This document shows positions 1,447 to 6,833 of a stretch of DNA of 64,000 bases, one piece after another; the stretch's first letter is position 1, and each line of letters starts with the position of its first letter. The notes below the pieces were generated by a model. It was not told the origin of the DNA. It did not search any database and worked only from the letters and a program-made list of their open reading frames with translations. The DNA lies in sequence record LC819005.1; one strand, 5' to 3'. The position numbers and the translations under genes are program-made.

Positions 1447-1484
1447 CGGCATAAAAAAGTGGGGGAGGGCCAATGCCCTCCCCC
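1447..1484 (-). terminator. Hairpin + TTTTTTATGCCG terminator-like element
   Basis: GGGGGAGGGC/GCCCTCCCCC stem followed on the minus strand by a T-run and ATGCCG. Confidence 0.75.
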
Positions 1485-2263: not shown

Positions 2264-2301
2264 CAGCAAAAAAAATAACTCAGGCGGCCGAAGCCACCCA
2301 A
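2264..2301 (-). terminator. Intrinsic terminator
   Basis: TGGGTGGC-TTCG-GCCGCCTG hairpin followed by a TTATTTTTTTTT tract, right after the 2304 stop. Confidence 0.7.
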
Positions 2302-2303
2302 GC

Positions 2304-2432
2304 TTACTTCAGCCAATGCACTAATGCAGCGATTACGCCCAACACGATTACCAGCTTGAGCTTGTTCTTCTGCACTTGCACATAGAACTCGGGCTCTTCC
2401 ACCATGCGATCAAACGTCGTACGCTTCTTCAT
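2304..2432 (-). CDS. Small membrane peptide (42 aa), not in ORF track
   Basis: MKKRTTFDRMVEEPEFYVQVQKNKLKLVIVLGVIAALVHWLK; ATGA overlap with the upstream ORF; RBS-like GGAGG; hydrophobic C-terminus. Confidence 0.65.
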   Translation of the reverse strand: MKKRTTFDRMVEEPEFYVQVQKNKLKLVIVLGVIAALVHWLK

Positions 2433-3188: not shown

Positions 3189-3300
3189 TGGTCCCTTGGG
3201 GAGGATTCGAACCTCCGACCTACGTCTAGTGGAAGGCCCAGGCGGCTTTCGCCGCGGGCCTAGGTAATGACGTCGCTCTACCAGACTGAGCTACCGCGGG
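3189..3300 (-). ncRNA. tRNA-like RNA with a 42-nt expanded anticodon loop
   Basis: Canonical D arm (GCTC-AGTCTGGTA-GAGC), T arm (GGAGG-TTCGAAT-CCTCC), CCA end and anticodon stem ACGTC/GACGT, but the loop holds a GAAA-capped hairpin and the acceptor stem has two mismatches. Confidence 0.8.
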
Positions 3301-3508: not shown

Positions 3509-3585
3509 TGGCGCGGCGTAGGGGACTTGAACCCCTGACCCCTGGCGTGACAGGCCAGTACTCTAACCAGCTGAGCTAACACCGC
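3509..3585 (-). tRNA. trnD: tRNA-Asp(GTC)
   Basis: Anticodon arm CTGGC-CTGTCAC-GCCAG; encoded CCA. Confidence 0.95.
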
Positions 3586-3600
3586 AAACTACAAAACTGA

Positions 3601-3677
3601 TGGCAGAGAGGGAAGGATTCGAACCTTCGCATGTCGGAATCAAAATCCGATGCCTTAACCAACTTGGCGACCTCCCT
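3601..3677 (-). tRNA. trnQ: tRNA-Gln(TTG)
   Basis: Anticodon arm TCGGA-TTTTGAT-TCCGA; encoded CCA. Confidence 0.95.
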
Positions 3678-3687
3678 AATACTTCTC

Positions 3688-4010
3688 GCATAACTATACT
3701 CCCCAGAGCTCCGGTTCAGGCGCGCAACGCGATTCGCAGATGCAGATCGTCGCGCTTTAGATCCTACTCTAGGGGCTATAGTTTCGCTGCTAACGATACA
3801 ATAACTTGAAGCTTTGATTGATGGTCTTTGCTTCCTACACTTTAGGGAAGGGTATCAATCTTCCCAACGTGGCCGCGCCTCCTTTCGGTTAGCGCGCAGG
3901 TATGTCCAGGGCTCCCTTTCGGGCAGCTGAACCATGGCCAGAAGTCAATGCAGCTACATCGAGATTCTGTTAGGACCTGGGAGCGAATGCAGTGTGAGTC
4001 TTCGCATCAA
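3688..4010 (-). ncRNA. Candidate ~330-nt structured RNA 5' of tRNA-Gln
   Basis: GAAA-capped hairpins and two interleaved 7-bp long-range helices (3927-3933/3713-3719 and 3777-3783/3692-3698); no credible ORF. Confidence 0.5.
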
Positions 4011-4039
4011 ATAGGGGTGATGTGTATTTTTTTACTTTG

Positions 4040-4159
4040 TTAAGCTATAGCACTAATCACCCAGAGAATCAAAGTAGCGACTACGGCGTACGCTATCAGT
4101 AGATCGCCGTAGTCGCACGACGGCTCGTGCCACGGTGAGTTCGGATCTTCCTCTTCCAT
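4040..4159 (-). CDS. Small membrane peptide (39 aa), not in ORF track
   Basis: MEEEDPNSPWHEPSCDYGDLLIAYAVVATLILWVISAIA; TGATG overlap with the upstream ORF. Confidence 0.6.
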   Translation of the reverse strand: MEEEDPNSPWHEPSCDYGDLLIAYAVVATLILWVISAIA

Positions 4160-4513: not shown

Positions 4514-5224
4514 TTAGTGAACCGTCGCGTTTTCGCCGTAGAGCGGGTACGGAGCTTCGTCGAAATCCTCCTGTTCGATTTCTTGCTCCGACTTCCATTG
4601 GTACTGAGCATGGAAGCCCATCAGCACTTCCAGCCACCAGACCTGTGCGTGCGGGGACGGTGTGATGGCGATCTTGTGCTCGACACCCTCATCGTCCTTC
4701 ACGATCAGAATCGGCATCGCCAGCCAGTTGTACTTCTCTTTGATCGTGTGGGATTTGAAGCCCATCTCGACACGCAGCTTGTGCTTCTTGAGGAAGGTGT
4801 CCTCGAACTGCTTGCTGAGCTTGAGCGTGGAGAAGACGGTTTCCCAATCTTCCTTCTGGATGGCCGTCTTGTTCTTCAGACACGTCACACCCAGGTTGAC
4901 GATGGCGTCACAGAACGTGAACCAGCGATTGAAACGCTCGGCCCATTCCGCGCCAGTGATCTTGTCCTTGCGCAGCGCCGATTGCTGGTCGCTGATGATG
5001 AACGGCAGCACCGCTTCGAATTCTTTACGGTCGAAGAAATAGCCATCAGCCTTTGAGCGTTCCTCGTCGATTTGCTTCTGCACTTCTTCGAGGGTAGCGA
5101 TGATGCTATTGTAATGCGGGTCGACTTGTTCAGCCAGTTCGATTTCTTCGTTCACCTTCGCCACGCCTGCGTCGATGTCGGCTTGAACGTCTTGCGGGAT
5201 TTCGGGATTGTTGGATTCGGACAT
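4514..5224 (-). CDS. Hypothetical protein with acidic coiled-coil N-terminus
   Basis: 236-aa ORF with phage-like codon usage. Confidence 0.85.
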   Translation of the reverse strand: MSESNNPEIPQDVQADIDAGVAKVNEEIELAEQVDPHYNSIIATLEEVQKQIDEERSKADGYFFDRKEFEAVLPFIISDQQSALRKDKITGAEWAERFNRWFTFCDAIVNLGVTCLKNKTAIQKEDWETVFSTLKLSKQFEDTFLKKHKLRVEMGFKSHTIKEKYNWLAMPILIVKDDEGVEHKIAITPSPHAQVWWLEVLMGFHAQYQWKSEQEIEQEDFDEAPYPLYGENATVH

Positions 5225-5291: not shown

Positions 5292-5897
5292 CTATTTGCG
5301 AATGTCATCTATCGCGTCTTCAAGACTCATACCGCTTTTAACGCGATGGTAGACAAGATAGTATTCGATGTCGAGTTCCTTGCACCACACAGCCAGCGCC
5401 TTCACTTCGCCATCGAATTCGCAATACACTGTGTTGTGCCGGTTACTCATTTGTTCAGCTTGAGTGACCCAGCGACAATTGTCCTTGCTGTAACCGAGGT
5501 CATTCTTCTCCCTGTCGAGAGAATGCATTTCTGAGGGCCGTGGACCCATGTCTCGATAGAAAGCTTCAAAGTTATCTTTCCACTCATCGCACACAGTGAT
5601 GCCTCGGCCACCGTAGCGGTCGTAGTGTTTGTGAGTGGGATTGTAGCAGCGAGTTTTCATATCTCGCCATGCTCGGTATTCAGGAGATCGCGCCATCCCG
5701 TGTTGCGAAACATCGAGAGTACAGCCGCAGCACACAGCGACCCCTCTTTGCAGATTGTAGGACTTTACGAGTTTCTCGTTACCACAGTCGCACAGACATT
5801 TCCACTGAGTGCTGCCGCCTTGCGAGTTTTCGAGATGTCTCGACTGAACAACGAGTTTGCCGAAACGCAAACCTTCAAGCTTTAATGGTGCAGGCAT
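5292..5897 (-). CDS. Free-standing HNH-family homing endonuclease
   Basis: Motifs WKCLCDCGN, HGMARSPEYRAWRDMKTRCYNP, YGGRGITVCDEW, HSLDRExNDLGYSKDNCRW typical of this phage HNH family. Confidence 0.85.
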   Translation of the reverse strand: MPAPLKLEGLRFGKLVVQSRHLENSQGGSTQWKCLCDCGNEKLVKSYNLQRGVAVCCGCTLDVSQHGMARSPEYRAWRDMKTRCYNPTHKHYDRYGGRGITVCDEWKDNFEAFYRDMGPRPSEMHSLDREKNDLGYSKDNCRWVTQAEQMSNRHNTVYCEFDGEVKALAVWCKELDIEYYLVYHRVKSGMSLEDAIDDIRK

Positions 5898-6461: not shown

Positions 6462-6833
6462 TTATTGGTCGAGCACCGGCACTTCTTCCAACGGACCTTC
6501 CCAGTCAGTTTCTTCGAGATCTTCCGGCTTAATCCCGAACACGTTCCGATCCATCGCACCACTCAATGGCAGCATTGTGTCGCGGTTGAACACTTCCATC
6601 ACCGCGACTTTGATCGTACCGTCTTCGTAGAACGAGTTCAGCACGACGCGCTGTCCCGTAGTCTTCAGCCGATACAACCGATCGAGTCGTAGATTGTGCT
6701 CGGCGACCATCTTGCGAATCACTTCGGGTCGCCCGGCTATCCAGTTATCCCAATACTTCACATGGGCGTCGGTCCAGTTGAGCCATGTCGACGCGGGCCG
6801 ATCACCCAGAACCTTGAGTTTATCTTCAACCAT
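6462..6833 (-). CDS. Hypothetical protein
   Basis: 123-aa ORF directly downstream of dcd with AAGGAG RBS. Confidence 0.8.
   Translation of the reverse strand: MVEDKLKVLGDRPASTWLNWTDAHVKYWDNWIAGRPEVIRKMVAEHNLRLDRLYRLKTTGQRVVLNSFYEDGTIKVAVMEVFNRDTMLPLSGAMDRNVFGIKPEDLEETDWEGPLEEVPVLDQ

What the first reader, a model, noticed from the sequence alone, without database searches (positions are those of the whole stretch)
3688..4010. ~330-nt structured RNA with an apparent long-range pseudoknot immediately 5' of tRNA-Gln
Seen: on the minus strand two perfect 7-bp helices interleave as A(3933-3927 GGUUCAG), B(3783-3777 AACUAUA), A'(3719-3713 CUGAACC), B'(3698-3692 UAUAGUU). There are also GAAA-capped hairpins (GCCC-GAAA-GGG, CC-GAAA-GG), GGGAAG/CUUCCC, a long GCGCGACGAU/AUCGCGUUGCGC stem and a possible closing helix CUCCCAGG/CUGGGGAG. 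Known: an interleaved P3/P7 pseudoknot with hairpins inserted between P7 and P3' is the group I intron core topology, and B' in context (GAGUAUAGUU) loosely echoes the S element. However, the G-binding G-C pair, P6 and P9 are not evident, and no interrupted gene flanks it. Inference: an undescribed ribozyme-like or scaffold RNA co-transcribed with the tRNAs.
Basis: partly seen in the sequence, partly recalled or inferred. Interest (0 to 1): 0.7.

Follow-up and report, generated by a model that had tools for sequence, protein, structure and literature searches.

The report
New folded RNA heading phage tRNAs
A giant virus of the plant pathogen Ralstonia carries, just in front of its tRNA genes, a gene for a roughly 350-base folded RNA that matches no known RNA family; the RNA is real and conserved, but the knot-like, intron-like fold first proposed for it is not.

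Summary
The window is Ralstonia jumbo phage FLC1-1B. Minus strand 4039-3678 is an ORF-free, ~350-nt structured RNA that sits between the stop codon of a small ORF and tRNA-Gln.

- **Homologs:** they exist in FLC4-3B, RP12/RP31, one IMG/VR jumbo-phage genome and one metagenome contig. Each genome holds one copy, always directly 5' of the first tRNA of the cluster.
- **Structure:** four diverged lineages share one architecture. It has a three-way-junction domain, several hairpins with invariant loops, and a long 3' hairpin. In 43 registered pairs, 166/172 cells are canonical and 20 pairs show compensatory double changes. Partners slid by 1-3 nt give only 58-72/172.
- **Known families:** no Rfam family matches any lineage, including group I introns, RNase P RNA, tmRNA, ROOL and GOLLD.
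B/B' is real, but it is the nested closing stem of the 3' domain. A/A' and the "closing helix" are not conserved. Two interleaved perfect 7-bp helices occur in 44% of shuffles. The pseudoknot and group I-like reading therefore fail.
- **Expression:** contigs lying wholly inside the RNA occur in soil and rhizosphere metatranscriptomes. This is only a weak sign of expression.
- **Most likely reading:** a stable trans-acting RNA released from the tRNA precursor by RNase P. Its function is unknown.
- **Earlier scan notes:** they report other large RNAs in the same RNA island of this genome.

The parts
3678..4039 (-). Whole RNA element. It runs from the first base after the stop codon of the 39-aa ORF to the base before tRNA-Gln. 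The conserved structured core is 4039-3692 (348 nt).
   Evidence: There is no ORF. Homologs of 342-390 nt are found in RP12, an IMG/VR UViG and a metagenome contig. The alignment-fold z-score is -5.4 against column shuffles.
4022..4033 (-). Invariant A-tract plus UACAC. It is bracketed by a lineage-variable stem P0 (4039-4036 with 4011-4008 in this phage). UACAC can pair with GUGUA at 3840-3836 (helix H1).
   Evidence: The segment is invariant in four lineages, except C->U in the metagenome copy, which keeps a G.U pair. P0 is clear in RP12, the UViG and FLC4-3B but weak here. H1 has no compensatory change, so it is unproven.
3983..4005 (-). P1 hairpin (GCGAA/UUCGC) with the invariant loop GACUCACACU.
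   Evidence: Two pairs show double compensatory changes, GCGAA/UUCGC versus GCAGA/UCUGY.
3897..3979 (-). P2 three-way-junction domain:
- P2: 3979-3975 with 3901-3897
- P2a: 3969-3965 with 3943-3939
- P2a': 3962-3956 with 3951-3945, capped by the invariant palindromic AGCU loop at 3955-3952
- P2b: GAAA-capped hairpin with a bulged G, 3932-3904
   Evidence: The P2 sequence differs in all four lineages yet stays paired (CAGGU/ACCUG, CCUA/UAGG, CCGGC/GCCGG, CUGUC/GACAG). Each lineage folded alone gives the same junction.
3927..3933 (-). It lies in the base of arm P2b and pairs locally (GUUCA with UGGAC 3908-3904).
   Evidence: No equivalent long-range partner exists in the other lineages.
3874..3896 (-). 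P3 hairpin with an inner CC-GAAA-GG cap.
   Evidence: The GAAA-capped hairpin is present in all four lineages. The outer stem is present in three and absent in RP12 (by inspection).
3845..3865 (-). P4 hairpin (GGGAAG/CUUCCC). Its loop holds the invariant UGAU (3857-3854).
   Evidence: Five of seven pairs have changes on both sides.
3835..3844 (-). Invariant junction UAAAGUGUAG. It is complementary both to UACAC (H1) and to CU-C-ACACU in the P1 loop.
   Evidence: The segment is invariant. RNAalifold on the full alignment picks the pairing with the P1 loop. The two options cannot be told apart by covariation.
3808..3834 (-). P5 hairpin (GAAGC/GCUUC). Its loop holds the invariant CAUCA (3823-3819), which is complementary to the P4 loop UGAU.
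   Evidence: Three of four pairs have changes on both sides. The loop-loop pairing is 4 invariant bp, extended to 5 bp here and 6 bp in RP12. This rests on inspection only and is not above chance.
3784..3807 (-). Invariant single-stranded AAGUUAU, a variable 6-mer, and the small P5a hairpin (3796-3792 with 3788-3784, loop AGC).
   Evidence: helix 4: only one-sided changes. The environmental variant UGACUC falls in the variable 6-mer.
3692..3783 (-). 3' domain, one long irregular hairpin:
- P6a: 3774-3770 with 3705-3701
- Pz: 3769-3766 with 3709-3706
- a variable GC-rich terminal hairpin, 3755-3722
   Evidence: RNAalifold recovers P6, P6a and Pz with four compensatory pairs. All four lineages fold alone to the same shape, z = -3.0 to -4.5.
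3601..3677 (-). tRNA-Gln(UUG), the first of four tRNAs (Gln, Asp, Asn, Tyr; 3677-3313). It begins 14 nt after the RNA's last helix.
   Evidence: ARAGORN and Rfam.
4040..4159 (-). 39-aa ORF, apparently a small hydrophobic protein. Its stop codon abuts the RNA. It is not annotated in the FLC1-1B record.
   Evidence: It is conserved in FLC4-3B (annotated there) and in the IMG/VR genome at 50-54% amino-acid identity.

Best explanation
This is the gene for a previously undescribed, ~350-nt structured non-coding RNA. It is specific to the RP12/FLC1-1B clade of Ralstonia jumbo phages.

**Making and maturation (inferred).**
- It is most likely transcribed on the same precursor as the upstream small genes and the downstream tRNA cluster.
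- Host RNase P, which cuts at the 5' end of every pre-tRNA, would define its 3' end 14-16 nt past the last helix.
- Its 5' end would be protected by the P0/H1 stems.

**Fold (shown by covariation).**
- A 5' hairpin, P1, with an invariant loop.
- A three-way-junction domain, P2.
- Hairpins P3, P4 and P5.
- A long 3' hairpin, P6.
- These elements are linked by about 70 invariant unpaired nucleotides.

**Action (inferred).** These invariant loops and junctions are presumably the working surface. They would serve for tertiary packing and for binding a partner in trans. That partner could be a protein, another RNA or further copies of itself, as in the large phage RNAs ROOL and GOLLD that also sit beside tRNA islands. 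The biological function is not known.
For: - **Identity of the window:** FLC1-1B.
- **Non-coding:**
- **Homologs:** four diverged lineages plus FLC4-3B. Each of the four whole genomes scanned holds one copy, and every homolog sits directly 5' of the first tRNA, whichever tRNA that is (Gln, Asp, Asn or a tRNA-like gene).
- **Covariation, hand-registered pairs:** 43 pairs give 166/172 canonical cells and 20 pairs with double changes. Slid partners give 58-72/172.
- **Covariation, tool count on P4/P5/P5a:** 97.7% of cells are paired, 8 pairs change on both sides, and 0/500 shuffles reach that.
- **Independent recovery:** RNAalifold recovers P1, P2a and P2a' and P6, P6a and Pz. Single-sequence folds of each lineage converge on the same junction and the same 3' hairpin. 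The alignment-fold z-score is -5.4.
- **Transcription unit:** the consensus scan finds no promoter-like or terminator-like site on the minus strand between the RNA and the tRNAs.
- **RNA libraries:** contigs of 219-234 nt, 96-98% identical and lying wholly inside the RNA (3767-3995), occur in three metatranscriptome runs from two studies. Nothing from those runs lies on the flanking CDS.
- **Precedent:** ROOL and GOLLD are phage RNAs often near tRNA islands (bioRxiv 10.1101/2024.12.08.627333).
Against: - No direct transcript ends are known. The metatranscriptome runs were selected by this very sequence, their depth is only 4-7, and DNA carry-over cannot be excluded.
- Only four independent lineages are available, so formal covariation statistics of the R-scape kind are out of reach.
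- The helices were registered by hand relative to invariant anchors.
- The RNA as a whole is no more conserved than neighbouring genes: 53-70% identity against 64-87%.
- The 100% identity between FLC1-1B and FLC4-3B is simply the genomic norm, since the two genomes are 99.0% identical (PMC11530567). The diverged flanks are the outliers.
- Nothing here shows a trans function, a partner or any oligomerisation.
Confidence: 0.55

Rival explanations
1. It is a cis-acting leader of the tRNA operon. On this view the folded 5' block insulates the tRNAs from translation of the upstream ORFs, protects the precursor from 5'-end-dependent decay, or guides its processing. It would have no life of its own after cleavage.
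For: - It is always immediately upstream of the first tRNA, with a short 5-16 nt spacer, in every lineage.
- The consensus scan finds no promoter-like or terminator-like site of its own.
Against: - About 70 invariant unpaired nucleotides and a multi-domain fold are far more than a protective leader needs.
- The adjacent tRNA changes identity between lineages while the RNA's invariant loops do not.
- RNA-library contigs cover the RNA body, although this is weak evidence.
Confidence: 0.25
2. One reading: a ribozyme-like RNA whose core is an interleaved A/A'-B/B' pseudoknot with group I-like (P3/P7) topology.
For: Both 7-bp complements exist in FLC1-1B at the stated coordinates. B/B' is conserved.
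Against: - A/A' is absent from three other lineages.
- Both A and A' have conserved local partners.
- Interleaved perfect 7-bp pairs occur in 44% of shuffles.
- No group I hit appears at E<=10 in four lineages.
- There are no flanking exons.
- The hairpin sits between B and A', where group I introns have a very short junction (from general knowledge of group I architecture).
Confidence: 0.03
3. It is a chance-structured spacer or decaying remnant with no function, or it hides a small protein-coding gene.
For: Its distribution is narrow, and its overall identity is no higher than that of neighbouring genes.
Against: - Compensatory changes maintain at least ten helices over 53-70% sequence identity.
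- Long invariant blocks persist.
- The position is conserved.
- Open frames differ in frame and place among lineages.
Confidence: 0.03

Closest known systems
ROOL and GOLLD (large 'ornate' RNAs of phages and prophages)
   Same: Both are phage-encoded, elaborately folded non-coding RNAs of unknown function, often located next to tRNA islands. They have conserved hairpin loops and GNRA tetraloops that, in ROOL and GOLLD, make kissing-loop and A-minor contacts.
   Different: - There is no sequence or structure match to the Rfam models in any lineage.
- This RNA is about 350 nt. GOLLD often exceeds 800 nt, and ROOL is roughly 580 nt by my recollection.
- It is restricted to one clade of Ralstonia jumbo phages.
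- Self-assembly is untested.
Stable RNAs C and D (species 1 and 2) of the phage T4 tRNA gene cluster (from my own knowledge, not checked here)
   Same: They are small stable RNAs of unknown function encoded within a phage tRNA cluster and matured from the same precursor as the tRNAs.
   Different: - The T4 RNAs are much shorter, about 120-140 nt.
- No homology was tested, because none of the libraries searched here returned a model for them.
- The hosts and phage lineages are unrelated.
Group I introns (Rfam RF00028)
   Same: The size class is similar, both have GNRA-capped hairpins, and one FLC1-1B-specific pair of interleaved complements superficially resembles P3/P7.
   Different: The interleaved pairing is not conserved. 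There are no exons, no model match, and no G-binding site is identifiable. It is not a member.
Bacterial RNase P RNA and tmRNA
   Same: They are of similar length, tRNA-associated and contain pseudoknots.
   Different: No Rfam or ARAGORN match was found. There are no CR-I/CR-V-type conserved blocks and no tRNA-like acceptor/T-arm module.

Membership tests
Group I intron | Conserved P3/P7 interleaved pseudoknot forming the catalytic core | tested here: not met
   A/A' has no counterpart in RP12, the UViG or the metagenome copy. Both strands pair locally.
Group I intron | Interrupts a host gene (flanking exons, P1 with a U.G at the 5' splice site) | tested here: not met
   The element is flanked by the stop codon of a conserved 39-aa ORF and by a complete tRNA-Gln.
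Group I intron | Match to the family covariance model (RF00028) | tested here: not met
   No hit at E<=10 in four lineages.
RNase P RNA (bacterial A/B, archaeal, type T) | P4 pseudoknot built from universally conserved CR-I/CR-V sequences; match to the Rfam models | tested here: not met
   No RNase P model hit at E<=10. The invariant blocks found here do not resemble CR-I/CR-V as I recall them.
tmRNA | tRNA-like acceptor/T-arm domain plus tag reading frame | tested here: not met
   ARAGORN finds only the four tRNAs. There is no Rfam tmRNA hit.
ROOL / GOLLD | Match to the family covariance models | tested here: not met
   No hit at E<=10 in any lineage.
ROOL / GOLLD | Phage or prophage location near a tRNA island | tested here: met
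   It lies directly 5' of the tRNA cluster in all lineages. For the literature on ROOL and GOLLD.
ROOL / GOLLD | RNA-only homo-oligomeric assembly through kissing loops and A-minor contacts | not testable with these tools
   The complex predictor refuses RNA-only jobs and gives no verdict for protein-RNA jobs. Only a palindromic invariant AGCU loop and complementary UGAU/AUCA loops are seen.
New family proposed here (RP12/FLC1-1B-clade tRNA-leading RNA) | Shared architecture P1-P2(3WJ)-P3-P4-P5-P5a-P6 with the invariant blocks A6UACAC, GACUCACACU, AGCU, UGAU, UAAAGUGUAGG, CAUCA, CAAGUUAU, GUUAGCAGCGA and ACUAUAGCCC | tested here: met
   The core covariance model R1 finds exactly one copy in each of the four whole genomes scanned (E about 1e-31 to 1e-33) and none in four related jumbo phages.

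The most novel reading that the evidence does not exclude
The RNA is a compact relative-in-kind of ROOL and GOLLD. After release from the tRNA precursor it would self-assemble into an RNA-only particle. Assembly would go through its invariant palindromic AGCU loop (UAGCUG in two lineages, CAGCUA in two) and the complementary UGAU/AUCA loops. Alternatively, it is a new ribozyme or RNA chaperone that acts on the phage's own tRNA precursors, possibly linked to handling of RNA made inside the phage nucleus of phiKZ-like phages.
Probability: 0.12. Interest if true: 0.8.

Novelty: new variant of a known kind. Interest (0 to 1): 0.5.

Why it matters
Large, elaborately folded phage RNAs beside tRNA islands (ROOL, GOLLD) are a standing puzzle. 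Their structures are known but their function is not, and most come from uncultured sources.

This RNA has features that make the puzzle easier to attack:
- It is a third, unrelated and smaller RNA of the same genomic habit.
- It sits in cultured, sequenced jumbo phages (FLC1-1B, FLC4-3B, RP12, RP31) with a tractable host.
- At about 350 nt it suits chemical probing and cryo-EM, and the phage can be used for deletion genetics.

According to earlier notes of this scan, it lies in an RNA-gene island that also holds a tRNA look-alike and a ~780-nt structured RNA. Together these suggest that the phages invest heavily in non-coding RNA.

The hosts are bacterial-wilt pathogens, and FLC4-3B is being considered for biocontrol (PMC11530567). 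Knowing what these phage RNAs do therefore has practical value.

Tried and rejected
1. **Known RNA families.** I ran Rfam at the gathering threshold and at E<=10 on four lineages, plus ARAGORN. Only tRNAs were found.

Both are rejected by comparative analysis and shuffles.

3. **More homologs.**
   - Five IMG/VR pattern scans, one metagenome scan and one genome scan gave only RP12, one UViG and one metagenome contig.
   - One badly specified pattern returned 14 unrelated loci.
   - Transitive blastn from the diverged copies found no further phages.
   - The core covariance model finds nothing in RSL2, RSF1, Burkholderia phage FLC9 or BcepSauron.

4. **Paralogs.** None exist within the four genomes.

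5. **Hidden ORF.** No conserved frame was found.

6. **Partner protein by synteny.** gp130 (phrog_34653) always lies upstream but has no Pfam, PHROG-function or Atlas lead, and it has the same narrow distribution. A word-index search for gp129 homologs found nothing.

7. **Complex prediction.** Neither counts as evidence.

8. **A-tract as a repeated promoter motif.** There is only one exact copy in 64 kb, which is the chance level. No sigma-70-like promoter or terminator sits next to the RNA on its strand.

9. **Pairing with the downstream RNA island.** Complementarity between the invariant loops and the downstream RNAs is not above chance.

10. **Identity with FLC4-3B as a sign of special constraint.** Rejected, because the two genomes are 99.0% identical overall and the neighbouring gp129 and gp130 are also identical.

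Full report
**What the window is.** blastn identifies the window as Ralstonia phage FLC1-1B (LC819005.1), a 290-kb jumbo phage. The finding lies on the minus strand. Upstream of it is an unannotated 39-aa ORF whose stop codon is at 4042-4040. Downstream is tRNA-Gln (3677-3601), the first of four tRNAs: Gln, Asp, Asn and Tyr.

**Checking the observation.**
- The stretch has no ORF of 30 aa or more on its strand.
- It folds better than all 100 dinucleotide shuffles, z = -3.1.
- The specific claim, two interleaved perfect 7-bp helices, is not unusual. The 351-nt stretch holds four perfect 7-bp complements against 3.5 expected, and 44% of 1000 shuffles contain an interleaved pair.

**Relatives.** Homologs were found in five places besides FLC1-1B:
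- FLC4-3B, identical over about 330 nt.
- RP12 and RP31, which are identical to each other over the aligned stretch.
- A 283-kb IMG/VR genome.
- A 1.3-kb metagenome contig, MTEW01004586.1.

Further points on the relatives:
- Pairwise identity among the four diverged lineages is 53-70%, with many indels. That is no higher than for the neighbouring genes.
- Each of the four whole genomes searched with a covariance model of the core holds exactly one copy, at E about 1e-31 to 1e-33.
- The related jumbo phages RSL2, RSF1, Burkholderia FLC9 and BcepSauron have none.
- Further blastn and pattern scans add nothing.
- A soil DNA run holds a copy about 92% identical.
- In every case the RNA sits directly 5' of the first tRNA of the cluster, whatever that tRNA is: Gln here, Asp in the UViG, Asn in the metagenome contig. 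In RP12 it is an unannotated tRNA-like gene with an insertion, which scores 35.8 bits on the Rfam tRNA model.
- Upstream there is always a homolog of gp130 (phrog_34653, function unknown), with zero to three small ORFs in between.

**Structure.** The four lineages share one architecture.

| Element | Window coordinates (minus strand) | Notes |
|---|---|---|
| P0 | 4039-4036 with 4011-4008 | Variable stem around the invariant A6-UACAC; strong in RP12, the UViG and FLC4-3B, weak here |
| P1 | 4005-3983 | Hairpin with the invariant loop GACUCACACU |
| P2 domain | 3979-3897 | Three-way junction: closing stem P2, arm P2a/P2a' capped by the invariant AGCU, and variable arm P2b |
| P3 | 3896-3874 | GAAA-capped hairpin |
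| P4 | 3865-3845 | Loop contains UGAU |
| J4/5 | 3844-3835 | Invariant junction UAAAGUGUAG |
| P5 | 3834-3808 | Loop contains CAUCA |
| Linker and P5a | 3807-3784 | Invariant CAAGUUAU (3808-3801, its first base shared with P5), a variable hexamer, small hairpin P5a |
| P6 domain | 3783-3692 | Long 3' hairpin: P6, P6a, Pz, P6c and a variable tip |

Evidence for these helices:
- In 43 pairs registered against invariant anchors, 166 of 172 cells are canonical and 20 pairs carry changes on both sides. Sliding the 3' partner by 1-3 nt drops this to 58-72 of 172, with 0-2 such pairs.
- The tool count on the model-aligned core (P4, P5, P5a) gives 97.7% paired cells and 8 pairs changed on both sides. 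None of 500 shuffles reaches that.
- RNAalifold, run blind on sub-alignments, recovers P1, P2a and P2a', and P6, P6a and Pz.
- Each lineage folded alone gives the same three-way junction and the same 3' hairpin, z = -3.0 to -4.5.
- The consensus-fold energy of the full alignment is 5.4 sd below column-shuffled alignments.
- Caveats: there are only four lineages, the registration was done by hand, and no R-scape-grade statistics are possible.

- B/B' is P6, the nested closing stem of the 3' domain. Its first pair runs A-U, G.U, G-C, G-C across lineages.
- Strand A lies at the base of arm P2b and pairs locally (GUUCA/UGGAC).
- Strand A' pairs locally with GGAUC, and the same local pair (GGAUC/GAACU) exists in the UViG.
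- Between the regions homologous to A and A', the other three lineages have no complementarity above shuffles.
- The proposed closing helix CUCCCAGG/CUGGGGAG is replaced by two others. One is P2 (CAGGU/ACCUG, a different sequence in every lineage). The other is P6a (CCCUA/UGGGG).
- The A/A'-B/B' pseudoknot is therefore not supported.
- A different long-range contact is possible. The invariant AGUGUAG of J4/5 is complementary to UACAC in the P0 loop (5 bp). The metagenome copy has UACAU there, which keeps a G.U pair. AGUGUAG is also complementary to CU-C-ACACU in the P1 loop (7 bp with a bulge), and RNAalifold chooses that pairing.
- The P4 and P5 loops are likewise complementary (UGAU/AUCA; 5 bp here, 6 bp in RP12).
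- All of these segments are invariant, and with about 70 invariant unpaired nucleotides such matches are expected by chance. They remain hypotheses.

**Known families.**
- Rfam 15 at E<=10 gives nothing but tRNAs in all four lineages.
- ARAGORN finds no tmRNA.
- Group I membership fails on the conserved core knot, on exons and on the model.
- RNase P RNA, tmRNA, ROOL and GOLLD all fail on the models.
- No open frame is conserved.
- The two genome papers mention only tRNAs in this region.

**Expression.**
- The consensus scan finds no sigma-70-like promoter or intrinsic terminator between the upstream ORFs, the RNA and the tRNAs on the minus strand. The first terminator-like hairpins downstream are at 2520-2496, 2304-2277 and 1484-1461.
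- 31-mers of the RNA occur in rhizosphere and soil metatranscriptome runs.
- In three such runs, from two studies, one contig of 219-234 nt and 96-98% identity lies wholly within 3767-3995. Nothing lies on the flanking CDS.
- One variant turns the GAAA loop into GAGA, which is still a GNRA loop.
- This is weak evidence. The runs were chosen by this sequence, depth is 4-7, the flanks of the environmental relatives may be too diverged to be laid, and DNA carry-over is possible.

**Interpretation.** The RNA shows four features:
- a multi-domain, covariation-supported fold;
- long invariant loops and junctions;
- a fixed position at the head of the tRNA cluster, whatever the adjacent tRNA;
- a single copy in each of the four whole genomes scanned.

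Together these point to a discrete functional RNA rather than a spacer. I judge it most likely (about 0.55) to be released from the polycistronic precursor by RNase P cleavage at the first tRNA. This step is inferred from the universal role of RNase P. It would then act in trans through its invariant surface. A purely cis-acting leader role is the main rival (about 0.25). By genomic habit it resembles ROOL and GOLLD and, from my own knowledge, the stable RNAs of the T4 tRNA cluster. It is homologous to none of the families that could be tested here. Self-assembly through the palindromic AGCU loop is an attractive but untested idea.

**A correction worth recording.** The perfect identity of the RNA between FLC1-1B and FLC4-3B, set against diverged flanks, looked at first like extreme constraint. 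It is not. The two genomes are 99.0% identical, and gp129 and gp130 are identical too. What stands out is the small diverged patches on both sides of the RNA:
- the 39-aa ORF at 54% amino-acid identity;
- a 168-nt insertion carrying an extra ORF in FLC4-3B;
- a tRNA-Gln gene with about a dozen substitutions.

**Verdict.** This is a genuine new family of structured phage RNA. The proposed pseudoknot and group I-like core are not there. Function is unknown, distribution is narrow, and interest is moderate.

Noticed in passing
L003:2848-2955 (RP12, + strand; the same in RP31): Directly after the RP12 copy of the RNA lies an unannotated 108-nt tRNA-like gene. It scores 35.8 bits on the Rfam tRNA model (gathering score 29), but ARAGORN misses it because of an insertion of about 35 nt after the anticodon-arm region. 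It occupies the place of tRNA-Gln in FLC1-1B.
   Followed up: partly
window 4040-4159 (-): This 39-aa ORF with a hydrophobic C-terminal half is not annotated in the FLC1-1B record. It is conserved, at 50-54% amino-acid identity, in FLC4-3B (annotated there as gp129) and in the IMG/VR genome. It is probably a real small membrane protein.
   Followed up: partly
window 3601-3677 and 4040-4110, compared with L002:4042-4780: FLC1-1B and FLC4-3B are 99% identical overall, yet short patches on both sides of the RNA are strongly diverged. These are the tRNA-Gln gene (about 12 substitutions, mostly compensatory-looking), the 39-aa ORF, and a 168-nt insertion with a 61-aa ORF in FLC4-3B. It looks like local module exchange around an unchanged RNA.
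   Followed up: partly
window 5292-5897 (-): gp131 is an HNH endonuclease (phrog_374, E = 7e-68). It is present in FLC1-1B but missing at this position in FLC4-3B and RP12, so it is probably a mobile homing-endonuclease insertion. FLC1-1B gp133 (window 6462-6833) is likewise absent from FLC4-3B here.
   Followed up: no
window 4514-5224 (-): gp130 (phrog_34653, 236 aa; 291 aa in RP12) lies upstream of the RNA in every lineage and has the same narrow distribution. It has no Pfam or Atlas lead, and its stored Atlas model is poor (pLDDT 0.43).
   Followed up: partly
window 2277-2304 and 1461-1484 (-): Two strong terminator-like hairpins with U-tracts lie on the minus strand. They bracket the ORF-free stretch where earlier notes of this scan place a ~780-nt structured RNA. 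The RNA studied here, the tRNAs, the tRNA look-alike (3189-3300) and that RNA form one same-strand RNA-gene island.
   Followed up: no
soil DNA run X1, laid on window 3509-4159: A 1348-nt environmental contig carries a copy of the RNA and tRNA-Gln/Asp region that is about 92% identical. In it, 262 other letters replace window 4016-4110. Further lineages of this phage clade therefore exist in soil and could deepen the alignment.
   Followed up: no
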